IMG/VR virus record: IMGVR_UViG_3300044846_005229
Coordinates: 186,001-250,000 of that record
Length of the DNA stretch: 64,000 nucleotides
Reading direction: 5' to 3' (one strand)
Part shown: positions 802-40,423 of the stretch, piece after piece
Position numbering within the stretch: position 1 is the first letter of the stretch
How the letters are laid out: each line of letters opens with the position of its first letter
Program-made: the position numbers and the translations under genes
Notes under the pieces: generated by a model
The model's database searches: none
Seen by the model: only the letters and a program-made list of their open reading frames with translations
What the model was told of the DNA's origin: nothing

Positions 802-891
802 TAGGCGCGTAGGGAATCGAACCCTAACTAGCCGGTAATCTGCCGGAGAGGTCTTCATAAGGGACCCTGTGCTACCGTACACCACACGCCC
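802..891 (-). tRNA. tRNA with UAU anticodon (Ile, AUA-reading) and long variable arm
   Basis: GGGCGTG/CGCGCCT acceptor, GTGT/GCAC D stem, GGTC(C)/(A)GACC anticodon stem with loop CTTATGA, CCGG-CAGATTA-CCGG variable arm, TAGGG-TTCGATT-CCCTA T arm, A73; CCA not encoded. Confidence 0.8.
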
Positions 892-3051: not shown

Positions 3052-3555
3052 TTAAGAATTCCTGGCAATAACTTCTTTCAGAAACTCCAAGCCTTCTTCA
3101 TTGCTATCATGGAAATAAGATTCAGCTTCTTCGCCCAGCAAATAGTAGCCAGCACAATCAGGCCAGTCTGAGAATCCTACTTCACCCGCCATTACTTGGG
3201 CAAATCCTGCGATGCAATGGACAGTACCGCATTCGTTAAAGGCTTCTTTGCCCTCAATGGGTTTGCCAGTTAGCGTGCGGCCCCACCGTGGACCCCATGC
3301 CTGATGGTAAAGCGCCATATCAAAGTTATCCAAATCACGCTCTACAATCCAAATCGCCACATGGAGAAGGTTAGCCTCTTGTTGCTCGGGTGTGAGCAGA
3401 ATGTCTAGGCTCTCAGGGATATGGGGCAGTGGGGGGAGGCCAGATGTGATACCCAGGTTCTGGAGGTTAAGGCGAGTGGTTTCAGTCAGGGAAAGAGTGG
3501 TAGTTGTCATTTTTGTGTTTGTGGATAATGTGGGTTTATTGATGGTGTTAGACAA
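3052..3555 (-). CDS. hypothetical phage protein
   Basis: ORF with CGTVHCIAGFAQV motif; in co-oriented array. Confidence 0.65.
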   Translation of the reverse strand: MSNTINKPTLSTNTKMTTTTLSLTETTRLNLQNLGITSGLPPLPHIPESLDILLTPEQQEANLLHVAIWIVERDLDNFDMALYHQAWGPRWGRTLTGKPIEGKEAFNECGTVHCIAGFAQVMAGEVGFSDWPDCAGYYLLGEEAESYFHDSNEEGLEFLKEVIARNS

Positions 3556-3589
3556 AGTGGTAAGAAAACTATTTCCCCCCTTTTTTATC

Positions 3590-4587: not shown

Positions 4588-5418
4588 TCAGACAGCCGCC
4601 ATTTCCAAGGCTACCCGCATCGCCCGCTGATTGATAGATACACCTTGGCCAAAATTAGCATAGTTAAAACAACCGTCGTTAGTCTTACGGACTTCGTGAC
4701 TAGAAAATTCTGTCACGCTATTGAGCGCATCATATAGGGTGTGCCCCTCGTTGCCTTTACCATTATAGAAAAGGTCGTTAAGCCTCTCAATGTTGCGAAT
4801 CTTGTCACCCTCCTTCTTATTGTAGGTAGCTTCCATGAAGCGGGTGAATTGTGCCCCGGTGCAAGTGGCATTGGCAATGGTTTCTACGTTTTGGGCATAA
4901 CGTGCCATGTCTTCATTGACGAGATCCATTACCATACTAGACCCAATAACAAGCTCGTTTACGCCCCTATTATGTCGGAATTTTTGACCAATATCCCTGT
5001 AGGCCATGGTGAACGTATTAGCACAGATAACGCGAACTGCTGATGAACCGATAGCCACCGATGCGTTGGCTGTGTGGCCGTTTAGTAGTGTAATAAAGGC
5101 ATTGTAATTCTCACCAATAACTTGGAATCCTTGGCTAATGCGAGCCTGGACGAATACCTTAGCCCCGTTCTGAAGGTGCCCCATGTTTTCCACTGTAAGA
5201 ATACCTTCTTCCACCAAGGGGCTAACTTTATTTAGAAGGACTTCGTTTTGAACAGATTCGTAGCCCGTGGTAACATACCCGAGGCGATAATCATTGTCAT
5301 CACGGTGAACAGCAACCGTGGAAGGATCAACTTCCCACTCCCCTTTGAAATTCATGGATGCGACGGCCCGATTAGAAACGGTCCAGTCTAGGTTGTCAGT
5401 GATGGCGAAAGCAGTCAT
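4588..5418 (-). CDS. DUF932 family phage/plasmid protein
   Basis: LDWTV...R.D....LG.V...Y..VQN...G.L.NG.KVF...L.N.H......VRV.C.NT pattern. Confidence 0.8.
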   Translation of the reverse strand: MTAFAITDNLDWTVSNRAVASMNFKGEWEVDPSTVAVHRDDNDYRLGYVTTGYESVQNEVLLNKVSPLVEEGILTVENMGHLQNGAKVFVQARISQGFQVIGENYNAFITLLNGHTANASVAIGSSAVRVICANTFTMAYRDIGQKFRHNRGVNELVIGSSMVMDLVNEDMARYAQNVETIANATCTGAQFTRFMEATYNKKEGDKIRNIERLNDLFYNGKGNEGHTLYDALNSVTEFSSHEVRKTNDGCFNYANFGQGVSINQRAMRVALEMAAV

Positions 5419-6206: not shown

Positions 6207-6983
6207 CTATATCAGGGGGTGGAGCCTGCCATCGTGGCCAAAATACCGGAGCACCTTGGTTTCCACATCGTACAGACAAAGTTTGGTATCTTCAGGGTCG
6301 ATTTCGCTATGGGAAGACCCACCCATTTGACCGTCGAGGACGATGTTTTTCTCGCTGATGTAAACATTATGATAATGTCCAGCGACCCGGACCCATTCCT
6401 TATCATCATCTTCCAGCCACCATGGGAGGCGATCAGACGTAACTTTGCCATCTTCCAGGGTAACCTTATAGAAAGGACCATAAATCATGGTATTCAGTTC
6501 CTTGCGGGTAATAGCATTGGGCATTACTTGGTGGGTGCCATTATATTTCGGGATGGGCAATCTGCGGGGGAAACAAGCGTGAGCGCACCGGTATTCGGTC
6601 CCTTCCGCATCCCTAAATACAAAGCCATAAGGCATCGAGTCAAGCCAAGGCAATACTTCACCGACTAAGTCAATTCCGCCTCTCTCAAAGTCATCTAAGG
6701 TAGTTCGCAAGTCTTGGAAAACCTTGACCTTGTTTCCCTTGAGGCATCGAACCAGTTTATTTTGGTGATTGCTTTGTAGGATAATAGTGCCAGGAATTTC
6801 CCTTTGAATTTGCCTCACTGCATGGTAAACTCCGACAGAATCCGAGGTTTCGCACCTTGAATCAAAAAGGTCCCCCAGTAGAATCGGGGTCAATCCTTCC
6901 GACAAGCAGTGCCCTAGGGCCGCTTCCAGGGGGGGCAACTGGGAATGGATGTCACCAATGATGGCGTAACGAATGTGTGTCAT
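6207..6983 (-). CDS. calcineurin-like metallophosphoesterase (PPP/Pnkp-phosphoesterase-like)
   Basis: IIGDIHS, LLGDLFD, QSNHQ, CAHAC and AGHYH motifs. Confidence 0.8.
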   Translation of the reverse strand: MTHIRYAIIGDIHSQLPPLEAALGHCLSEGLTPILLGDLFDSRCETSDSVGVYHAVRQIQREIPGTIILQSNHQNKLVRCLKGNKVKVFQDLRTTLDDFERGGIDLVGEVLPWLDSMPYGFVFRDAEGTEYRCAHACFPRRLPIPKYNGTHQVMPNAITRKELNTMIYGPFYKVTLEDGKVTSDRLPWWLEDDDKEWVRVAGHYHNVYISEKNIVLDGQMGGSSHSEIDPEDTKLCLYDVETKVLRYFGHDGRLHPLI

Positions 6984-7137: not shown

Positions 7138-7599
7138 TTAATAGTCCCAGTACTCATGGTTTAAAAAGTCTAGTAAAAGTTGGATGATATTTCTTTTGCG
7201 TTTTTTGCTCTGTGGAGTAAACCTACCAAATTTCTCAAGTTCTTCGACAGATGCTTCCTGAAGCCAATAATGGAAAGAATCCATTTCCATGGAGCAAATT
7301 TCATTGAAGGCTAGGTCGGTGGCTTTCTTTGGGGGTTTGATGGACCGTGCGTAGTGGCTATTTGAATTATAAGTGTCAAAAACGCTAATTTCTTGAACTG
7401 GCTCAACCTTAACTTTTTCTTTCCCTCTTTTTGTAGGTAGAGATTTTAGTTCTAGTTCCTTTTCCAAGGCACCTATGAAGTTATTATACTTAATGTTTTC
7501 ATCAACGCGACTCAAGAAACGACTGTATTCATCGTCCATTTCATCTTCTGATTGGGAATGCTTTCTGAAATAATCAGGATCTATGATTGACATTTTCAT
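7138..7599 (-). CDS. hypothetical protein
   Basis: ORF in co-oriented array. Confidence 0.65.
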   Translation of the reverse strand: MKMSIIDPDYFRKHSQSEDEMDDEYSRFLSRVDENIKYNNFIGALEKELELKSLPTKRGKEKVKVEPVQEISVFDTYNSNSHYARSIKPPKKATDLAFNEICSMEMDSFHYWLQEASVEELEKFGRFTPQSKKRKRNIIQLLLDFLNHEYWDY

Positions 7600-7796
7600 C
7601 TAGTACGGCCTGAACAGCAAGGGAAAGATTATCCATTGGTCGGAAACTCCATCGGGATCAGAACTTGGCAATTATTTCGCCGGATAAACATCAGGGGGAT
7701 ACAACTGATTGATTGCGTCTCTAATTAGGAGAGCAGCGCTTTAAGGTTGTGATAGGCATTTTGCTGTGGGGGTTGTTTGGAACTGTTATCAGTGCC

Positions 7797-7825
7797 ACTC
7801 TAGCATGGTTGCTGCTAGGTGTCAA
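7797..7825 (-). promoter_or_regulatory. sigma70-like promoter
   Basis: TTGACA-17 nt-TAGAGT with extended TG. Confidence 0.6.
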
Positions 7826-7853
7826 CTCTTAACCAAGTTATAAATGTAGTGAA

Positions 7854-7965
7854 TGGGACCAGTAGGATTTGAACCTACACCTCTCCTTTAACGTAGGAAT
7901 TTAATTGCTGATGTATCTTTGACAAGATAACTTTCTTTAGCGCTCTGTCGTTGAGCTATGGTCCC
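7854..7965 (-). ncRNA. tRNA-like RNA with ~41-nt insert carrying a hairpin + CAGCAA between the D arm and an anticodon-like arm
   Basis: GGGACCA/TGGTCCC acceptor, GCTC/GAGC D stem, GTAGG-TTCAAAT-CCTAC T arm, TTCCT-ACGTTAA-AGGAG anticodon-like hairpin, insert containing TATCTT-GTCA-AAGATA-CAT-CAGCAA. Confidence 0.8.
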
Positions 7966-8005
7966 TTGTTTGCTTCGCAAATAGCTTGTTGAAACATGGT
8001 TTAGC

Positions 8006-8054
8006 TAGATAGTTGGTTTTCCGATTTTGAAGGGGATGGTTGCTGAACTATCTA
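8006..8054 (-). ncRNA. stand-alone CAGCAA stem-loop module
   Basis: TAGATAGTT/AACTATCTA 9-bp stem closing a 31-nt loop that starts CAGCAA and ends GAAAACC. Confidence 0.7.
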
Positions 8055-8072
8055 CGTTTGCCGAAGGCAAAG

Positions 8073-8199
8073 TCGAAGAGGCAAGATTCGAACTTGCGTA
8101 TGGCGGTTCCTTTAGCGCATTTGGTGTTGCTGAGCTACCTAAAGCATAACTAGATAGTCCTTTTGCATTACCGCCGCCTTACCACTTGGCTACTCTTCG
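8073..8199 (-). ncRNA. tRNA-like RNA (Cys-like scaffold) with enlarged anticodon loop carrying a hairpin + CAGCAA
   Basis: CGAAGAG/CTCTTCG acceptor, TAGCCAAGTGGTAAGGC D arm, GCGGT/ACCGC anticodon stem, GCAAG-TTCGAAT-CTTGC T arm; insert contains CTATCTAG/TTAGGTAG hairpin then CT-CAGCAA. Confidence 0.8.
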
Positions 8200-8233
8200 T
8201 TTTGGGTGTCTGGGTGTCTTAACCGTTAAAGGT

Positions 8234-8296
8234 CAACAAGGTGAGTTTTGCTGGATTTGAACCATTCCCCTTTGTTGCCCTGGTGAACTACCAGGG
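8234..8296 (-). ncRNA. structured element with T-loop hairpin and CAGCAA
   Basis: CCCTGGT-AGTTC-ACCAGGG hairpin; CAACAAAGG/CCTTGTTG stem enclosing TGG-TTCAAAT-CCA followed by GCAA. Confidence 0.5.
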
Positions 8297-8315
8297 AAGC
8301 TAACTTTATTTAAAC

Positions 8316-8367
8316 AAGATGGTTGGTTTTTCTGTTACAAAGAAAGGTTAGATTGCTGAACCATCTT
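8316..8367 (-). ncRNA. stand-alone CAGCAA stem-loop module
   Basis: AAGATGGTT/AACCATCTT 9-bp stem closing a 34-nt loop that starts CAGCAA and ends GAAAAACC; covaries with 8006-8054. Confidence 0.7.
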
Positions 8368-8407
8368 ACGGGATTGCCTTACTTACCGCCCATTAACCCT
8401 ATTTCCA

Positions 8408-9914
8408 TCAGGCGAATACCATACCCACAGAGTCATACCTTTCAGTATATACCGCGTCCCGCATCAGGGACAATGGGGGTAATTGCATTGCCGGTAAGAA
8501 CTGCGGTCAGGATTGACGGAGAGCAACCGCTAACGAGAGCGGTACCGGAATCATGGACCTTCATCGGGACGTTATCTGAGGAATTGACATTCCAGAAGAT
8601 GACATCAGGCAAGCTATAACCAGCTTGGGCATACTTGATTCGAATTGCTTCGTAGTTAGTGACTTTTTTTCCGCTATACCCCCAACCAGAACCAGTGCCA
8701 CCCATGACAACACAGTCATCAAACTGCATGTCTGAGACAATAATCAGTTTGCGGGGCATGTCTGACTCTGGAATGTTGTTCCGAACTGCAGTATCCAGAA
8801 TAAGGTCAAACGTCTTTTGGATGTCAGTGTTACCACCCCAATCTGCTCGGCTCAGGTTTCTAACCTTGCTGGAGAGACTATTGCCAGTCACAGTTTGTAG
8901 GGAGGGGTTACCCGAAAATGTTAGAAACTTGTTTTTCCAGATGCCAGTATTACGCTCTGCGATATACATCGCCAGAGAGATGGATACTGCCATCGGACGA
9001 CCCTCCATGGAACCGCTAACATCGGCAACAACAAGCCCATTCAATTCCTTGCCTTCCATGTAGTTGGGTAGAGCCTGCCAGAGGAGTTCAAGAGTATCGT
9101 TTGATTCGTTGTTATAGAGACACTTCTCAACGATGTCATACGGGTACAAAGTACCGGCATTGATTTTTGCCTCGCCTTTCTTGACTGCATCGAGGTAAGA
9201 CTGGTAGCGAGCACCATCATGGTTAGCAAAAGCTTTCCGATACATGAAGCCTGCACGAGAAGGCAACTTGCTATACTCAATGGCGTCCCACTCACGGGCA
9301 CACATTGGTTGTTCTACGATATTGATTTGGGTGCGAAGCGCAGTCAGGGCCTTGCGGTATTGACGCTCATTCCAACCCATTGCCTTAGCGATAAGACGGC
9401 CAACCCGCTTGGATTCCTTGCTAGAAGCGTTAATGGAAGGTAGCCATTTTGCTAGTAGTGACACTGGGTTTCCAACTTCGGTGTTCAGGTCAGTATTAAG
9501 CTGCGTCTTAATTGCTTCTAGGGCGATGACCCAAACTAGCGTCCCTTCGAGGGCCACAACATCGTCCCAGCGACCGTACTGCGGGATCAGGCCTACCAGC
9601 TTAGCTCCAATGGTCGCATCATTGCGAACCAGCTCCTTGAAGACTTCCCGGAAGATTTTTCGTTCTCCTTGCCCAATCCCCCTAATATCACGTGCCCAAA
9701 ACAGGATCCGGGTCGCAGTTTCAGGATCTTCGGCATAGGCTGACTTAAAGAGTTTAATGGCTGCATCAACATTATCACGGCAAGCTGCGATTTTACCGAA
9801 AAGGTCTAGGTTCTTTTGGCCCGTGGACCTATAGGCCTTTGCGCCGTTTGCAGTTGTGGTGATATTGGAGTTGGTATCCAGTTGGTTCTCAAGTGCATTC
9901 AAAAAGGTTGTCAT
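8408..9914 (-). CDS. DUF2828 family TROVE/Ro60-like + vWA domain protein (apparent +1 frameshift in the G5 run at 8475-8479)
   Basis: TTANGAKAYRSTG, WARDIRG.GQGER, YGRWDD, AKWLP, MIDAS VVADVSGSM, IVSDMQFD; removing one C restores the C-terminus ITPLSLMRDAVYTERYDSV. Confidence 0.85.
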
Positions 9915-10064
9915 TTTTCTTCTCTCAAGTTGATTGTTTTGTGTTTGTGTTTCGGATACAAATAATAGCTGTATCAACTTTGCCCCTAGGAGTTAATTTT
10001 AGGGGTGGTGGTGGGGGGCACTGACGGCCCCGATATTGGGCAGTTTGTAACTTAGCTGGGTCAA

Positions 10065-10354: not shown

Positions 10355-10897
10355 TTAGTACCCTAAATCGGGAGGAGCTTTGCCCCCAACTACAGCCGGT
10401 GAAAACCTAACTACGGTTACCTCCCCCATGTCCCCCAAATCTTCGGCAAACTTGTTCAAGCTAGCGAGAACCCTATCGGGGTTTCCACCTGCCAAACCAC
10501 ACCCAATCATTGGGAATCCGATTTTAACGGGAATTCTTGTTTCAGGGGGTAAACCCTGGCGACATACCTTAGCATATAACCTATTGAGAAATGTCTCAAA
10601 GGCTTCGTACTCAAATATGTCTTTGCCACGCCCAAATGTAAACTGGGTATAGGCGTTAATAATCGTAAAGCCACAACCATTTGCCCCCACAACGTCAACT
10701 TCGGAAAAGGTCCCGAGTTTATTCCGGGTGCCATACTTTGTCTGTCTATCGGCGATAGCCACCTCTGGCCACCTCTTCACAATTTGACCGGCGATACCGC
10801 TAGCCATCGTATGGAAGCAATTGGCACCATGACAAATAATGTCGAAGTCACCATTGTCTGCCATTGTGAGTAGGTTGTTGTCAATAATTGTTAACAT
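10355..10897 (-). CDS. macrodomain (ADP-ribose binding/hydrolase) protein
   Basis: HGANCFHTMASGIAGQI, INAYTQF, IGFPMIGCGLAGG motifs typical of phage macrodomains. Confidence 0.9.
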   Translation of the reverse strand: MLTIIDNNLLTMADNGDFDIICHGANCFHTMASGIAGQIVKRWPEVAIADRQTKYGTRNKLGTFSEVDVVGANGCGFTIINAYTQFTFGRGKDIFEYEAFETFLNRLYAKVCRQGLPPETRIPVKIGFPMIGCGLAGGNPDRVLASLNKFAEDLGDMGEVTVVRFSPAVVGGKAPPDLGY

Positions 10898-10950
10898 CCG
10901 ATTAGGTCCAATTTGGGTGGGGAATTTGTGAGATGGCGATACCCTACCAC

Positions 10951-11778
10951 TCAAAGTGGCGGGTGGTTAAGTTTATTGAGCACATATTCAAGTCTGGTGG
11001 GCTTTAGATCAAGGGGGATGTTATCTAAATTACCTGATGCGCCCGTACAATCGCCTTCTACTCCTGTGCAGTCCCCAATTAAGTTAGAGCAGTCCCCAAT
11101 TAAGTTAATTACCCTCCCGTATAAACCAGTGCAATTGCCGGTTAGGCCAGAAATAAATCCCCTCAGATTGGAGCAATCACCAAATAAATCCGGGTTAATG
11201 GTCCCTAAAGCCCCCGATAGGTCACCTGTTAATTTAGGGTTAATCATCCCTTTAACACCACTCAAGTCCCCGGTTAAGTCTTTATTAAGAGTACCGGATA
11301 AGCGTCCCCATGGGTCAATACCTAAACCCATATTACCGTACAAATTAGAAACATCCCCCTCCAATGATGGCAAGATTCTTCCCCTAAGATCGGAGTTTAT
11401 CTCACCTGTCAAATAACTCACATCTCCAATAAGCCTAGGATTGATCGTTCCACTGAGGTTAGAACAATCACCGAAGAGGAAAGGGCTTAGTTCGTCATAG
11501 GAGAGGCTCGGGTTTAACCCCTTTTGTACAGCCCCCTCACCATCTAACCAAAAAAATCTTTCGCTAGATTCAAAGAAGTCATGTATCTTGCTTCTCATTT
11601 CTAAGATTTCCGGCTCCAGGGGTATTTGAGGGGTTGCTTCAAATAAGGGTACAAGCTTGCCAACCGCTTCATCCCATGCGTAAGGTGTACGGATATTGTC
11701 ACCTAGCTTAAACCTGACTTCATTTAAGTCATAATAAAAGTCTAGCAGAACATTAAGATTGTCTTGTAACTGAGTCAT
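10951..11778 (-). CDS. protein with GD(C/V/L)S-x-L-x-G tandem repeats (probable beta-solenoid)
   Basis: About 12 imperfect repeats such as GDCSNLSG, GDVSYLTG, GDLSGVKG, GDCTGVEG. Confidence 0.7.
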   Translation of the reverse strand: MTQLQDNLNVLLDFYYDLNEVRFKLGDNIRTPYAWDEAVGKLVPLFEATPQIPLEPEILEMRSKIHDFFESSERFFWLDGEGAVQKGLNPSLSYDELSPFLFGDCSNLSGTINPRLIGDVSYLTGEINSDLRGRILPSLEGDVSNLYGNMGLGIDPWGRLSGTLNKDLTGDLSGVKGMINPKLTGDLSGALGTINPDLFGDCSNLRGFISGLTGNCTGLYGRVINLIGDCSNLIGDCTGVEGDCTGASGNLDNIPLDLKPTRLEYVLNKLNHPPL

Positions 11779-13262: not shown

Positions 13263-13715
13263 TCAAATCCCCATCGAAAGGTGCGCTTCATCGCGAATCC
13301 CCTCAAGGATGACCCCAAGTTTGTTGGCGCCATCTCCGGTCACAACATCAACACCCCAATAAGTGTCTCCCCAAGTGTTGCCTTCGATTAGCTTTGCGTT
13401 CCCTGTTTGTGCTAGGAGGTTTTTTAGATCTGGGTTCTGAAATTTAATGCGTAGTAACTCTTCCATAACTTTGTCTTTTCTAAGTTCCCACCCTATAGGG
13501 TCAAAGTCCTTTAAAATGCCGTTGCGGTTCCCGGCGGCTTTAGCCTCGCTTGGAGACTGCATCTTTGCGATTTGGTGGCGAGTTTCGGAGTCCTGAGTCT
13601 TAGCTGCTTGAAAGGCGTGTTCGACTGTGGGGTATTTGATCCCTTCGTATTCTAGAACGCTCTCATAAAAGTTTGACAGAAAGCTGAATTGGCCTGAGAA
13701 TTTGGTAATGGTCAT
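13263..13715 (-). CDS. NADAR family protein (YbiA-like)
   Basis: FLSNFY, YPTVEHAFQAAKT, W...K..VM...L..KF.NP.L...L..TG...L.EGNTWGD.YWG, GANKLG. Confidence 0.92.
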   Translation of the reverse strand: MTITKFSGQFSFLSNFYESVLEYEGIKYPTVEHAFQAAKTQDSETRHQIAKMQSPSEAKAAGNRNGILKDFDPIGWELRKDKVMEELLRIKFQNPDLKNLLAQTGNAKLIEGNTWGDTYWGVDVVTGDGANKLGVILEGIRDEAHLSMGI

Positions 13716-14062
13716 TTGTCTCCGAATTCGATAAACAGATTCATTTCCCAATAGTCAAATTGATCTTGGATGGCGTCCTTCGCTTCGTTGTATTCTTCCT
13801 CGGTAAGGCAGCCGGGGTTCTGATATAGGACCTTCATTCTTTCTAAAGAATTTTGCAGGCCCCGGATATATTCAGATTTGTACTTGCGTTTTTGGTATTC
13901 TTCCAAAGATTCCTTGACGCCGTCAGGCCAATAAATGGTGTCGGTTCGGGAGTCAAATCCTGGTAAGTCTCTGCTGAGGGCTTTGGAATTTTTAGCGGCT
14001 TGCTGATTGCACCATTCTTGTGCCCAGGAGAGTGGGCGAGTTGAGTCTGCTTCGAGTATCAT
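13712..14062 (-). CDS. hypothetical protein
   Basis: Coupled by ATGA overlap. Confidence 0.65.
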   Translation of the reverse strand: MILEADSTRPLSWAQEWCNQQAAKNSKALSRDLPGFDSRTDTIYWPDGVKESLEEYQKRKYKSEYIRGLQNSLERMKVLYQNPGCLTEEEYNEAKDAIQDQFDYWEMNLFIEFGDK

Positions 14063-14560: not shown

Positions 14561-15652
14561 TCAGCCACTCTTCTTCCCCTTAGATAGCAACCACTCATTA
14601 CTAATGGCCTTAAAGGAAAACTCAGAGTCATTGGACTTGAATACTAAGCCCTCACGTTTAACGTTAGGATTCATGGACGGGCCATCGGCGTACGCTAGTA
14701 GCTCATCTAGGTTGGCGAAACTATCGGTTACACACATTGCGGGGTGTAGGACAGGGGCATGGGTTAAATCAGCGCCTAATGGAACCAGGTACTTGTCCAA
14801 GAGGTTCATTCTGGCCCCTGGCTTCATGTAGGTCTGGTTGTCGATATCGAAGATGTCGAACAGATATAGCCGTTGTCCCTTGATTCCTTCCTGATTGCCC
14901 TGGATGCCTTCTCCAAGGGTTTCCGACTGCAAGGCAATACTGTGACCAGTCTTCCCATTGTATGCAAGCATAGCATCGATAATGCCCTGGTCCCTAGCAG
15001 CCTTCCAGAAACTATTGCCTTCGGTTTCCTTGAGATCAAGGTTACGGCTGCAAACCCCAATGTCACCGTCTTTGACGTAAATCGTACATGAAGATCCGTC
15101 GAGCTTCAGGGTAACTTCGTAGGTCTCATTCCTGTGGGTCTCAAAGATTTCGCTAGCGATATTCTGACAACGTTCCTGGTCTGTCTTCACAAGGAAGCTC
15201 GGGAAGTTGCCTTTTGCAATGCCAGCCAAACAAGCCGGTACAGGAGCCTCCCATTTCTGAATGCCGAGAATTTCGGTTACGTCGTCTCCTTCCTGAAGGC
15301 CCCTCTCAAATGCGGTGACATAGTAACTGAAGTCTACATAGAGCTTTAGAGAAATAGGCAACAGCAACCCTTGGCTGAGTTGCCCACGGAGCTTAACGGT
15401 CTTGAGACGTTCGCCCTTCACGCCGTTATACTCACGGGGCTCTTTCCCATTAGAAAGGAAGGGCGCCAACTCGTGAGGAATAAATGAGTCGGGTTCTGCG
15501 TAAATTACCAAATCCCCTACTTCATACTTCCCCACAGAATCCACAACCCACCAGCCATTCACACGGTAGGCACAGATTCTATCGGCTTCAGGGATGGGGC
15601 GAATCTCAGCAATGCGCTGGACAGATGCAAGTTTGCGTTCGATGTTTGCCAT
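14561..15652 (-). CDS. ATP-dependent RNA ligase, DRB0094/Rnl2-like family
   Basis: RKLASVQRI N-terminal OB-like module, KTDQERCQN, motif I KLDGSS, SRN, REGLVFK, FKAISNEWL. Confidence 0.92.
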   Translation of the reverse strand: MANIERKLASVQRIAEIRPIPEADRICAYRVNGWWVVDSVGKYEVGDLVIYAEPDSFIPHELAPFLSNGKEPREYNGVKGERLKTVKLRGQLSQGLLLPISLKLYVDFSYYVTAFERGLQEGDDVTEILGIQKWEAPVPACLAGIAKGNFPSFLVKTDQERCQNIASEIFETHRNETYEVTLKLDGSSCTIYVKDGDIGVCSRNLDLKETEGNSFWKAARDQGIIDAMLAYNGKTGHSIALQSETLGEGIQGNQEGIKGQRLYLFDIFDIDNQTYMKPGARMNLLDKYLVPLGADLTHAPVLHPAMCVTDSFANLDELLAYADGPSMNPNVKREGLVFKSNDSEFSFKAISNEWLLSKGKKSG

Positions 15653-39920: not shown

Positions 39921-40165
39921 GGGGACCGAAGCCCCCCGCAATGAGTCAGAATGCTATCGCTCAAACGGCGACGGCAGTCCTCTCGAATTTGACGATTTTG
40001 TTAGCGTCTATGTTGTGCTTATGCAAGCGGCTTTCGGTAATTGGCTTGCTGTCGGTCGATTCCAGAGCGGACCCTCGAAAGGGAAATGGATCCGGGGCGA
40101 TTCGAACGCCCGTGTCGCGCAGTAGTGACAACTACCTACACCCAGTTTTTAGCCGTATGGTAGGG
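39921..40165 (-). ncRNA. ssrA: two-piece (circularly permuted) tmRNA; tag ANKIVKFERTAVAV*
   Basis: T arm GGGCG-TTCGAAT-CGCCC (40095-40111) and 3' acceptor CGGATCC-A precede a 12-nt spacer and 5' acceptor GGGTCCG with G3-U70; TAGAC-GCT resume context; tag ORF 39961-40005; outer ends approximate. Confidence 0.92.
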
Positions 40166-40177
40166 CTTTAACAATTA

Positions 40178-40423
40178 TTACCCGTTACAGTTAAAAGTCG
40201 ATGTAATCTCATACTGCCTAAGTAAGTTAAACAACTCAGTTTGAAGGTCTTCGAAGCCGCCCACAAGTTGATCCTGAGTGACCGCATAGCAAGGACCCAC
40301 TTTAGAGCCAGCCCAAGGTATGATTTGTTTGTGCTCTAGAATCTTGTTCCTGTACTTAAGAAGTAGGGAGTTAATCCCGGAGGCTAGCTGAACTTTATCG
40401 GATAGAACTATTTGTTTTAACAT
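40178..40423 (-). CDS. hypothetical protein
   Basis: Start MLKQIV. Confidence 0.55.
   Translation of the reverse strand: MLKQIVLSDKVQLASGINSLLLKYRNKILEHKQIIPWAGSKVGPCYAVTQDQLVGGFEDLQTELFNLLRQYEITSTFNCNG

What the first reader, a model, noticed from the sequence alone, without database searches (positions are those of the whole stretch)
7854..7965. Second tRNA-like RNA has its insert between the D arm and anticodon arm
Seen: perfect 7-bp acceptor and normal D and T arms, plus a TTCCT-ACGTTAA-AGGAG hairpin in anticodon position (GTT centre, C33 instead of U33). The CAGCAA module is inserted 5' of that hairpin, a different site from the neighbouring RNA. Inference: two independent graftings of the module onto different tRNAs, which argues for function rather than chance decay.
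Basis: partly seen in the sequence, partly recalled or inferred. Interest (0 to 1): 0.6.

Follow-up and report, generated by a model that had tools for sequence, protein, structure and literature searches.

The report
tRNA-shaped Y-like RNA beside phage Ro60
This is not a decoding tRNA but a tRNA-shaped non-coding RNA of a 279-kb lake phage that carries a conserved "helix + CAGCAAUU" module where the anticodon arm joins the D arm, and it most likely is the RNA partner (a Y RNA) of the Ro60-like ring protein encoded just upstream.

Summary
Window 7854-7965 (- strand) scores 47.8 bits with the Rfam tRNA model. It has a 7-bp acceptor stem, D and T arms, and a 41-nt insert between the D arm and a UUCCU-ACGUUAA-AGGAG hairpin. 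ARAGORN finds it only after the insert is removed.

The insert is a conserved module: a 6-bp hairpin, 3 nt, then CAGCAAUU. The gene immediately upstream (8442-9977, -) is a Ro60-like TROVE+vWA protein by fold. Its mycobacteriophage homologues are annotated "Ro-like RNA binding protein".

In 52 related phage loci, 114 further tRNA-order RNAs of 100 nt or more were found (78 distinct sequences in all, about 38 acceptor stems). All lie on the Ro-like gene's strand, 110 of them 117-2241 nt downstream. 21 of 22 base pairs covary.

Distant relatives (34-48% protein identity, phages and bacteria) have the same helix+CAGCAA signature next to the gene. There it sits in circularly permuted, YrlA-type tRNA mimics.

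The "anticodon" differs among orthologues (Asn GUU here, Lys UUU elsewhere; C33, G33 or U33), so decoding is unlikely.

Best reading: an un-permuted YrlA-like Y RNA. Binding, processing and function are inferred, not shown. "Function rather than decay" is supported; "two independent graftings" is not established.

The parts
7854..7965 (-). tRNA-order Y-like RNA 't1' (112 nt), the finding itself
   Evidence: Rfam tRNA 47.8 bits. Own covariance model R1 98.6 bits, E 3e-18. MFE cloverleaf, z -3.8.
7959..7965 (-). Acceptor 5' strand GGGACCA. It pairs with 7855-7861 (UGGUCCC). Discriminator A at 7854. No encoded CCA.
   Evidence: Sequence. All 7 acceptor pairs covary across the family.
7942..7956 (-). 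D arm GCUC-AACGACA-GAGC. The loop lacks G18G19.
   Evidence: Orthologues have AACUGGUA.
7914..7929 (-). Module hairpin UAUCUU-GUCA-AAGAUA
   Evidence: All 6 pairs show changes on both sides among 98 distinct aligned sequences, 98.9% of cells paired.
7903..7910 (-). Single-stranded CAGCAAUU, 3 nt after the module hairpin
   Evidence: CAGCAA invariant in 21 of 21 seed sequences. Present as C[AU]GCA[AU] in 109 of 116 long hits.
7883..7899 (-). Anticodon-like hairpin UUCCU-ACGUUAA-AGGAG (C33, GUU)
   Evidence: Forms in the MFE fold. The loop differs among orthologues: ACGUUAA, CGUUUAA, CUUUUAA.
7862..7878 (-). T arm GUAGG-UUCAAAU-CCUAC
8073..8199 (-). Neighbouring tRNA-order RNA 't2' (127 nt). Its module (hairpin 8135-8157, CAGCAA 8127-8132) lies inside the loop closed by the anticodon stem.
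   Evidence: Rfam tRNA 47.6 bits. R1 35.4 bits. Orthologues in L001, L002-L009, L025 and L028.
8006..8054 (-). Free-standing element F2: 9-bp closing stem UAGAUAGUU/AACUAUCUA with CAGCAA directly after the 5' strand
   Evidence: Compensatory changes relative to F1.
8316..8367 (-). Free-standing element F1: closing stem AAGAUGGUU/AACCAUCUU with CAGCAAU after the 5' strand
   Evidence: Copies also at genome 258,0xx and 258,5xx, after tRNA-Met and tRNA-Phe.
8235..8262 (-). Remnant (T arm plus 3' strand) of a further element. Relatives L001 and L025 carry here a third tRNA-order RNA and about 1.3 kb that the window lacks.
   Evidence: Comparison of the window with L001 and L025.
8442..9977 (-). 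Ro60-like protein gene (511 aa; Pfam DUF2828 + DUF7788, vWA with MIDAS motif DxSGS)
   Evidence: Pfam and PHROG 850 'RNA-binding protein'. In the Foldseek search of the AF2 model, the top 13 hits are all Ro60/TROVE over the full length, E 8e-10 to 2e-4. Homologues (about 38% identical) are annotated 'Ro-like RNA binding protein' in mycobacteriophages.

Best explanation
Window 7854-7965 (-) encodes a non-decoding, tRNA-shaped Y-like RNA. It is related to bacterial and phage YrlA RNAs but wired in ordinary tRNA order.

Proposed mechanism:
1. The RNA is made from an array that follows the Ro60-like gene: F1, remnant, t2, F2, t1.
2. Its 7-bp acceptor stem and T arm let the tRNA-end-processing enzymes (RNase P, a 3' trimming enzyme, a CCA-adding enzyme) cut it out as a stable RNA.
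3. The internal module, a short AAGAY/RUCUU-type helix followed by single-stranded CAGCAAUU, projects from the junction of the D arm and the anticodon-like hairpin. It is the docking site for the phage Ro60-like ring protein.
4. The tRNA-like body then serves as the effector handle. It would bring tRNA-recognising or RNA-decay and repair enzymes to the ring, or gate the ring, during infection. The model for this is Y RNA tethering Ro60 to PNPase; an RNA ligase lies nearby here.

Shown here: the tRNA-like fold with covariation; conservation of the module; its strict co-location and co-orientation with the Ro-like gene over wide evolutionary distance; the Ro60 fold of the protein; permuted YrlA-type relatives carrying the same signature.

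Inferred: transcription, processing, protein binding and the downstream function.
For: (1) tRNA-like fold. Rfam tRNA 47.8 bits. On 21 seed sequences 99.8% of cells pair and 14 of 22 pairs change on both sides. On 98 distinct sequences 98.9% pair and 21 of 22 pairs covary, including all 6 of the module helix.

(2) The upstream gene is Ro60-like. The 13 best Foldseek PDB hits are Ro60/TROVE proteins: Thermus phage phiLo Ro60 (9kop, 9l5y), Xenopus Ro (1yvp), D. radiodurans Rsr (2nvo) and human Ro60, each over about 500 aligned columns. The MIDAS motif is invariant. GenBank homologues are named 'Ro-like RNA binding protein'.

(3) Coupling. Model R1 finds 116 RNAs of 100 nt or more (114 in 52 loci, plus the window's two). 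All are on the gene's strand; 110 start 117-2241 nt downstream, median 479. In the window's own 279-kb genome the only strong R1 hit (98.6 bits) lies beside the Ro-like gene. In five related records of 190-277 kb all hits at E <= 1e-6 do too.

(4) The strict motif is expected about 0.014 times per strand per locus. It occurs up to 10 times per locus, on the + strand in all but four instances (three of those inside the Ro-like gene), in loci of 56-93% identity. In loci of 41-48% identity, 1-5 stem+CAGCAA elements lie just upstream of the gene. The same holds in 11 of 13 bacterial or archaeal contigs at 34-56% identity.

(5) Several distant elements are circularly permuted tRNA mimics that the Rfam YrlA model recognises: L078 49.2 bits, E 5e-8; also L068, L075, L060, L072 and Mycobacterium phage Lumos at 39.3 bits. 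They have the same circular order of parts as t1.

(6) Literature. YrlA RNAs lie within 4 kb of Ro60 on the same strand and carry a conserved motif next to the 5' strand of the closing stem (PMC4201824). Their Ro60-binding module extends from the anticodon-stem position (bioRxiv 10.1101/312249).

(7) Not a decoder. The 'anticodon' differs among orthologues and U33 is lost.

(8) Context. RNA ligase (14561-15652), macro-domain phosphatase, NADAR and metallophosphatase genes lie nearby. A CCA-adding-type nucleotidyltransferase lies at genome 179217-179633.
Against: No experiment or read data show that this RNA is made, processed or bound. The two metatranscriptome runs hold only contigs of relatives, and none covers 7854-7965.

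The loci were collected through the Ro-like gene, which biases the co-location. Whole-genome searches partly answer this.

Two free-standing elements of the same kind lie 64 kb away, in the main tRNA cluster. The module therefore need not act only beside the gene, and could be recognised by another factor.

The Rfam YrlA model does not hit the window, and the YrlA motif GNCGAAN0-1G is absent.

A FelixO1-like coliphage with a homologous protein showed no such element in the two flanking stretches inspected.

The window's copy has a weakened D loop (no GG).
Confidence: 0.68

Rival explanations
1. The module is a recognition or processing signal for some factor other than the Ro-like protein, for example an RNase, the RNA ligase, a host protein or another RNA. 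The tRNA-like RNAs are stable by-products or substrates of that factor. Adjacency to the Ro-like gene would reflect a shared RNA-repair island rather than direct binding.
For: Free-standing elements of the same type follow tRNA-Met and tRNA-Phe, 64 kb from the Ro-like gene. RNA ligase, macro, NADAR and phosphoesterase genes cluster nearby. No binding data exist.
Against: Among the genes examined, the Ro-like gene is the only constant neighbour, from 34 to 93% identity in phages and cellular contigs. Flanking genes in annotated relatives differ. The motif sits where YrlA carries its presumed Ro60 contact motif (PMC4201824).
Confidence: 0.2
2. It is a working tRNA, Asn(GUU) here and Lys(UUU) in relatives, that tolerates an extra arm or loses the insert by splicing.
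For: With the module removed in silico, ARAGORN calls tRNA-Asn(GUU) for the window and tRNA-Lys(UUU) for the L002 and L025 orthologues. The L002-type loop CUUUUAA is canonical. ARAGORN found no tRNA-Lys in this genome.
Against: The anticodon identity changes among close orthologues and U33 is replaced by C or G. G18G19 is lost in the window's copy. Other classes have 6-10-nt loops at this hairpin. No match to any Rfam family other than tRNA, so no described intron family, covers this stretch, and no recognisable splice junction structure was seen. The insert is the most conserved part of the RNA, the opposite of an intron.
Confidence: 0.05
3. It is a decaying tRNA pseudogene hit by a small mobile repeat (MITE-like).
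For: The module recurs in several places and in different tRNA-like scaffolds. The array is structurally polymorphic in lake samples (joints 7735>8263 and 7934>8042) and between relatives.
Against: Every stem keeps pairing through compensatory changes. All copies are in one orientation next to one gene. In each whole genome searched, the tRNA-order RNAs that embed the module (model R1) scored strongly only beside the Ro-like gene. No target-site duplications or terminal inverted repeats were seen.
Confidence: 0.03

Closest known systems
YrlA (Y RNA-like A; Rfam RF02553), partner of bacterial and phage Ro60/Rsr
   Same: It is encoded within 4 kb of a Ro60-type gene and on the same strand. It mimics tRNA T, D and acceptor elements. 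It has a conserved short motif beside a helix that projects from the anticodon side of the L-shape. Relatives of this locus at 41-48% protein identity carry permuted RNAs that the YrlA model scores at 32-49 bits.
   Different: YrlA is circularly permuted: the acceptor stem is closed by a loop and the 5'/3' ends form the Ro-binding stem. t1 has open acceptor ends in normal tRNA order, and the presumed Ro-binding helix is closed by a loop. The motif is CAGCAA(U), not GNCGAAN0-1G. A separate anticodon-like hairpin is kept. The YrlA model does not hit the window. The protein is Pfam DUF2828/DUF7788, not Pfam TROVE.
Yrl1 and Yrl2 of Thermus phage phiLo with phiRo60 (PMC12135203)
   Same: A phage-encoded Ro60 homologue with adjacent Y-like RNAs: a 5'-3' stem flanking an internal loop that holds a short conserved motif. 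This matches the free-standing elements F1 and F2 here. phiRo60 is the best structural match of the window's protein.
   Different: The motif there is CGAA. Those RNAs lie upstream of the gene, and the passages read do not describe them as tRNA-order molecules.
Deinococcus radiodurans Yrn1
   Same: A Y RNA with partial tRNA mimicry in which the order of D-like and T-like arms relative to the ends differs from YrlA (PMC4201824).
   Different: In Yrn1 the Ro-binding stem is formed by the RNA ends. Here the ends form a true 7-bp acceptor stem.
Ordinary elongator tRNA (Rfam RF00005), with or without an intron
   Same: Acceptor, D and T arms, a variable loop of 4 nt, discriminator A; scores above the tRNA gathering threshold.
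   Different: A 41-nt conserved insert between positions 26 and 27, C33, no G18G19, and a non-conserved 'anticodon'. ARAGORN rejects it.
tmRNA
   Same: A tRNA-like acceptor and T-arm domain with a large functional insert in place of the anticodon arm, bound by a dedicated protein.
   Different: No G3:U70, no reading frame, no pseudoknots. A cyano-type tmRNA is encoded separately at window 39921-40183.

Membership tests
YrlA / bacterial Y RNA | Encoded within about 4 kb of a Ro60 orthologue, on the same strand | tested here: met
   t1 begins 477 nt downstream of the Ro-like gene (8442-9977), on the same strand. All 116 long family members are on the gene's strand. The protein is Ro60-like by fold, and GenBank annotates its homologues as Ro-like.
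YrlA / bacterial Y RNA | Domain mimicking tRNA T arm, D arm and acceptor stem | tested here: met
   Rfam tRNA 47.8 bits. Covariation in all four helices.
YrlA / bacterial Y RNA | Conserved GNCGAAN0-1G motif near the 5' end | tested here: not met
   The conserved motif is CAGCAA(U), placed after the 5' strand of the module helix.
YrlA / bacterial Y RNA | Circularly permuted order: closed acceptor stem-loop, with the ends forming the Ro-binding stem | tested here: not met
   t1 has open acceptor ends and a closed module hairpin. Distant relatives (L060, L068, L072, L075, L078, phage Lumos) do meet it.
YrlA / bacterial Y RNA | Reaches the Rfam RF02553 gathering score (69 bits) | tested here: not met
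   No YrlA hit in window 7500-8700 at E <= 10. Permuted relatives score 32-49 bits.
YrlA / bacterial Y RNA | Physically bound by the Ro60 protein | not testable with these tools
   Needs EMSA, RIP or a structure.
Elongator tRNA | Cloverleaf recognised by tRNA models | tested here: inconclusive
   The Rfam model says yes (47.8 bits). ARAGORN says no unless the insert is deleted.
Elongator tRNA | 7-nt anticodon loop with U33, contiguous with the D arm through position 26 | tested here: not met
   The loop is ACGUUAA (C33). 41 nt separate position 25/26 from the hairpin.
Elongator tRNA | Anticodon identity conserved among orthologues | tested here: not met
   GUU in the window and L001; UUU in L002-type and L025, which has G33.
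Elongator tRNA | G18G19 in the D loop for the elbow contacts | tested here: not met
   The D loop is AACGACA in the window and L001. Orthologues keep AACUGGUA.
Ro60 / TROVE protein (for the upstream gene) | HEAT-repeat ring plus vWA domain with MIDAS | tested here: met
   AF2 model, pLDDT 71.7. The top 13 Foldseek hits are Ro60/TROVE over the full length. DxSGS is invariant.
Ro60 / TROVE protein (for the upstream gene) | Match to Pfam TROVE (PF05731) | tested here: not met
   Only DUF2828, DUF7788 and weak vWA hits at E <= 0.01. No NCBIfam hit. No PDB sequence hit.

The most novel reading that the evidence does not exclude
The tRNA-order members are genuine tRNA-end substrates: cut by RNase P, CCA-tailed, perhaps even charged. 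They would carry a Ro-ring docking arm instead of a working anticodon arm. The phage would use them as baits or adaptors that present a real tRNA body to host anticodon nucleases or tRNA-targeting defences, while tethering the Ro-like ring and the neighbouring RNA-ligase and phosphoesterase repair enzymes. This would be a tRNA-decoy and repair RNP, and a third, previously undescribed topology of Y RNA.
Probability: 0.15. Interest if true: 0.8.

Novelty: new variant of a known kind. Interest (0 to 1): 0.6.

Why it matters
Ro60-Y RNA particles are known from animals, bacteria and a few phages. What the tRNA-like half of bacterial Y RNAs does is still open.

This locus and its relatives show three things. 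A very large phage protein family that is annotated mostly as hypothetical is Ro60-like (at least 7,913 hits in the word search; 701 GenBank phage records). It has its own RNA signature, helix + CAGCAA. In one lineage of large lake cyanophage-like viruses the partner RNAs have returned to ordinary tRNA wiring, with free acceptor ends, in arrays of up to four per locus.

This gives a natural series of permuted and un-permuted versions of one RNP. It also gives cultured systems in which binding, processing and function can be tested directly: Synechococcus phage B23 and mycobacteriophages.

It also explains a class of "undetermined" long tRNA calls in phage annotation.

Tried and rejected
- blastn of the spacer against GenBank phages found no match.
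- Sequence search of the protein against PDB found nothing useful. The fold search was needed.
- Full-text search for 'DUF2828' gave only unrelated plant and animal papers. 'ROT TROVE' gave nothing. The supplements of PMC4201824 and two reviews are not held.
- The idea that the bare hexamer CAGCAA marks the module was rejected. It is common in coding DNA, and a loose regular expression gives about 10 chance hits per genome.
- Hammerhead-like and other ribozyme or intron readings of the insert are unsupported. No match to any Rfam family other than tRNA and a weak chance-level plastid motif at E <= 10.
- The promoter and terminator scan was uninformative. No terminator was found. One sigma-70-like site at 7825-7797 probably serves the next gene.
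- Comparison of scaffolds with 314 ordinary phage tRNAs gave only background similarity, 41-46 of 55 positions. The origin of each scaffold could not be settled.
- Reads were inconclusive for expression. Two metatranscriptome runs hold only relatives' contigs at 88-95% likeness, and none lies over t1.
- MAFFT alone mis-registers the module helix of the t2 and 'f' classes by one column. Pair counts were therefore made on a consistent subset (A3) and on the model-fitted alignment A4, which leans towards the model.
- RtcB is absent from the genome.
- A FelixO1-like coliphage with a homologous protein showed no stem+CAGCAA element in the two flanking stretches inspected. The coupling is therefore not universal.
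- Complex prediction was not used, because it handles protein pairs only.

Full report
WHERE THE WINDOW LIES. The window is bases 186,001-250,000 of a 279,339-bp IMG/VR virus record with direct terminal repeats, rated complete. GC content is 46.5%. ARAGORN finds 21 tRNAs, all on the - strand. A cyanobacterial-type permuted tmRNA lies at 39921-40183. Near-identical DNA occurs in many lake-water metagenomes. The closest cultured relative of the gene discussed below is Synechococcus phage B23.

THE OBSERVATION. On the - strand, 7854-7965 reads as follows:
- acceptor GGGACCA;
- UA;
- D arm GCUC-AACGACA-GAGC;
- a 41-nt insert;
- hairpin UUCCU-ACGUUAA-AGGAG;
- variable AGGU;
- T arm GUAGG-UUCAAAU-CCUAC;
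- acceptor UGGUCCC;
- discriminator A.

The Rfam tRNA model matches end to end at 47.8 bits, with 54 nt where the model expects 13. ARAGORN does not call it. RNAfold returns this structure as the minimum-energy fold, z = -3.8. The neighbour at 8073-8199 scores 47.6 bits. Its extra 62 nt lie inside the loop closed by an intact anticodon stem. The D loop lacks G18G19. And the bare hexamer CAGCAA is frequent in this genome, mostly as Gln-Gln codons.

WHAT THE INSERT IS. Aligning every long tRNA hit from related loci shows one shared module. It is a 6-9-bp hairpin (typically YAUCUWG-loop-WAGAUR), 2-4 nt, then CAGCAAUU.

The same helix and motif also occur with different wiring, as free-standing elements. 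There the 'AGAUR' strand and CAGCAAU come first and the complementary strand closes the element 25-45 nt later. The window holds two: 8316-8367 and 8006-8054. Two more follow tRNA-Met and tRNA-Phe at genome positions 258,0xx and 258,5xx. In the t2 class of relatives, the hairpin AUUACCUAG-C-UUAGGUAAU is the same 9-bp helix as that of a free-standing element, circularly permuted. The recognisable unit is therefore 'helix + adjacent single-stranded CAGCAAU', whatever the connectivity.

THE UPSTREAM GENE. ORF 8442-9977 (-) ends 477 nt before t1. Pfam gives DUF2828 + DUF7788 with weak vWA hits. PHROG 850 is labelled 'RNA-binding protein'. An AlphaFold2 model has mean pLDDT 71.7. Searched with Foldseek against the PDB, its 13 best hits are all Ro60/TROVE proteins, each aligned over about 500 columns. 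They are Thermus phage phiLo Ro60, Xenopus Ro, D. radiodurans Rsr and human Ro60, at E 8e-10 to 2e-4. The MIDAS motif DxSGS is invariant. tblastn finds homologues in 701 GenBank phage records. Those of mycobacteriophages, about 38% identical over 95% of the length, are annotated 'Ro-like RNA binding protein'. PMC4201824 reports YrlA-type Y RNAs next to the Ro60 orthologues of several mycobacteriophages.

COUPLING OF RNA AND GENE. Two scans of IMG/VR with the protein and with its alignment gave 83 loci at 41-93% identity. A covariance model (R1) was built from 21 tRNA-order RNAs. It found 116 matches of 100 nt or more: the window's two and 114 in 52 loci. These are 78 distinct sequences with about 38 different acceptor stems. 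Every one is on the strand of the Ro-like gene. 110 begin 117-2241 nt downstream of it, median 479.

In the window's own genome the only strong R1 hit lies beside the gene; the other three hits are ordinary tRNAs at 26-29 bits. In five related records of 190-277 kb all hits at E <= 1e-6 lie beside the gene. This partly answers the bias of having collected loci through the gene.

The strict pattern WAGRTR-N2-5-CAGCAA is expected about 0.014 times per strand per locus. It occurs up to 10 times per locus. All but four instances are on the gene's strand; three of those four lie inside the gene and one lies downstream of it.

STRUCTURE STATISTICS. On the MAFFT alignment of 21 sequences, 99.8% of cells pair. 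14 of 22 pairs change on both sides. Sliding the partners by 1-3 columns drops pairing to 33-46%. On the model-fitted alignment of 98 distinct sequences, 98.9% pair and 21 of 22 pairs covary, including all six of the module helix. That alignment leans towards the model, as the tool warns.

DISTANT RELATIVES. In loci at 41-48% protein identity, 1-5 elements lie just upstream of the gene. Their form is: 7-bp 5' strand (AAGACGC, AAGAUGC and the like), (U)AA, CAGCAA(U), a variable part, then the 3' strand ending UCUUG.

Several of these are circularly permuted tRNA mimics (L060, L068, L072, L075, L078). Their order is: stem 5' strand, CAGCAAU, small 7-nt-loop hairpin, variable, T arm, acceptor stem closed by a loop, UA, D arm, A-rich linker, stem 3' strand. 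The Rfam YrlA model recognises their T, acceptor and D parts at 32-49 bits (E 5e-8 to 4e-3), below its gathering score of 69. It does not align the CAGCAA stem.

Mycobacterium phage Lumos has the same arrangement downstream of its 'Ro-like RNA binding protein' gene: one free-standing element, one permuted tRNA mimic with CAGCAAU (YrlA model 39.3 bits), and another free-standing element.

Thirteen bacterial or archaeal contigs at 34-56% identity were also examined. They include Nodosilinea, Obscuribacterales, Thermoactinomyces, Firmicutes, Cellvibrionaceae and DPANN MAGs. Eleven have stem+CAGCAA elements on the same strand, within about 500 nt upstream of the gene or just downstream of it.

HOW t1 RELATES TO THEM. 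The circular order of parts in t1 is the same as in the permuted RNAs: D arm, A-rich linker, helix, CAGCAAU, linker, small hairpin, variable, T arm, acceptor. Only the open helix differs. In t1 the acceptor is open and the module helix is closed by GUCA. In the permuted forms it is the reverse. bioRxiv 10.1101/312249 states that most YrlAs resemble circularly permuted tRNAs and that the Ro60-binding module extends from the anticodon-stem side. t1 places its module at the equivalent position but keeps tRNA wiring.

The site 'between D arm and anticodon-like hairpin' is thus the family norm. The t2 class, with the module enclosed by the anticodon stem, is the variant.

NOT A DECODER. With the module deleted in silico, ARAGORN calls tRNA-Asn(GUU) for the window. 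It calls tRNA-Lys(UUU) for the orthologues in L002 and L025. The loops are ACGUUAA, CGUUUAA and CUUUUAA, while the stem is kept. Other classes have loops of 6-10 nt at this hairpin. The insert is the best-conserved part of the molecule, the opposite of what an intron shows.

ORIGIN. Scaffolds match ordinary phage tRNAs at 41-46 of 55 compared positions and match each other at 19-47 of 55. One class shares its T arm and 3' acceptor strand with a phage tRNA-Gln. Another shares its D arm with tRNA-Leu. This fits repeated recruitment of tRNA bodies but does not prove it. Both window RNAs have orthologues in phages at 74-93% protein identity, so whatever created them is old. In L001 and L025 a third tRNA-order RNA and about 1.3 kb lie between F1 and t2. 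The window keeps only a remnant of this at 8235-8262.

CONTEXT AND EXPRESSION. Nearby genes on the same strand include:
- an RNA ligase at 14561-15652 (TIGR02306);
- a macro-domain phosphatase at 10355-10954;
- a NADAR protein at 13263-13751;
- a metallophosphatase at 6207-6983.

A CCA-adding-type nucleotidyltransferase lies at genome 179217-179633. RtcB is absent. In relatives the array starts a few bases after a TTGACA-N17-TAAAAT/TAAGAT promoter-like site (seen in the sequences).

Two metatranscriptome runs contain contigs of related phages over parts of the Ro-like gene, over a free-standing element and over array flanks. None lies over t1, and DNA carry-over cannot be excluded. Expression is therefore unproven. 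One independent DNA run shows alternative joints within the array (7735>8263, 7934>8042). This points to cassette-like polymorphism.

VERDICT. The finding is real and functional. Its best explanation is a Y RNA-like partner of a phage Ro60-like protein: an un-permuted relative of YrlA with its own CAGCAA signature (confidence about 0.68). The main rival is that the module is read by some other factor (about 0.2). A working or spliced tRNA (about 0.05) and a repeat-hit pseudogene (about 0.03) are unlikely.

Against the literature I could read, the Ro60-YrlA partnership in phages is known. The tRNA-order topology, the arrays and the CAGCAA module were not found described there. GenBank labels the B23 member 'tRNA-Undet'. 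I rate it a new variant of a known kind, interest 0.6.

Noticed in passing
window 8235-8320 versus L001:4856-6400 and L025:4836-5800: Relatives carry a third tRNA-order RNA (acceptor GGGGAAU...), about 1.3 kb with small ORFs, and a T-arm-bearing free-standing element between F1 and t2. The window has a deletion that fuses GGGGAAU to the remnant T arm, so the CAGCAA at 8253 is accidental.
   Followed up: partly
window 802-891 (-): ARAGORN calls a 90-nt tRNA-Ile(UAU) with what looks like a long extra arm. The Rfam tRNA model does not report it at its gathering score, nor at E <= 0.01 in the whole-genome search. This is another odd tRNA-like gene.
   Followed up: no
window 39921-40183 (-): A cyanobacterial-type, circularly permuted tmRNA is encoded by the phage itself (Rfam cyano_tmRNA 72.8 bits; tmRNA_permuted 56.1 bits).
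   Followed up: no
genome G000:C1 about 257,990-258,045 and 258,530-258,585 (outside the window): Two near-identical cassettes (small GC hairpin, free-standing CAGCAAU element, conserved 50-nt tail) directly follow tRNA-Met and tRNA-Phe in the main tRNA cluster, 64 kb from the Ro-like gene. A 2.2-kb metatranscriptome contig of a relative covers such elements at higher depth than the Ro-like gene contigs.
   Followed up: partly
window 21934 and 22853 (- strand positions of CAGCAA): Two copies of a repeat of about 50 nt (...GUCAGCCUGUAUCCUAUUCG-CCCAACAGCAAUUAACCCA...), about 0.9 kb apart. The preceding bases do not fit the WAGRTR pattern of the module helix. Their relation to the module is unknown.
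   Followed up: no
L097 (Synechococcus phage B23, MN695335.1) 4905-5014 = record 220408-220517: GenBank annotates a 110-nt 'tRNA-OTHER / tRNA-Undet-???' about 390 nt downstream of the homologous gene (gp339, 'hypothetical protein'). Its sequence shows the module with CUGCAAU, flanked by free-standing elements. This is a cultured system for experiments.
   Followed up: partly
window 7735-8263 and 7934-8042: An independent lake-water DNA run has contigs that join 7735 to 8263 and 7934 to 8042. A metatranscriptome contig joins 7729 to 8257 with 392 other letters between. The RNA array appears to vary as cassettes within natural populations.
   Followed up: no
window 7797-7825 (-): A sigma-70-like site, TTGACA-17-TAGAGT with an upstream TG, lies just after t1 and overlaps a small AGCA/UGCU hairpin that contains one of the CAGCAA hexamers. 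It probably serves the 153-aa ORF at 7138-7599, which has no family match.
   Followed up: no
L099 (Escherichia phage vB_EcoM_E9, FelixO1-like) 1100-1975 and 3380-3560: A homologue of the Ro-like protein (37% identity) is followed directly by an ordinary tRNA cluster. No stem+CAGCAA element was seen in the two flanking stretches inspected. Not all members of the protein family have this RNA signature.
   Followed up: partly
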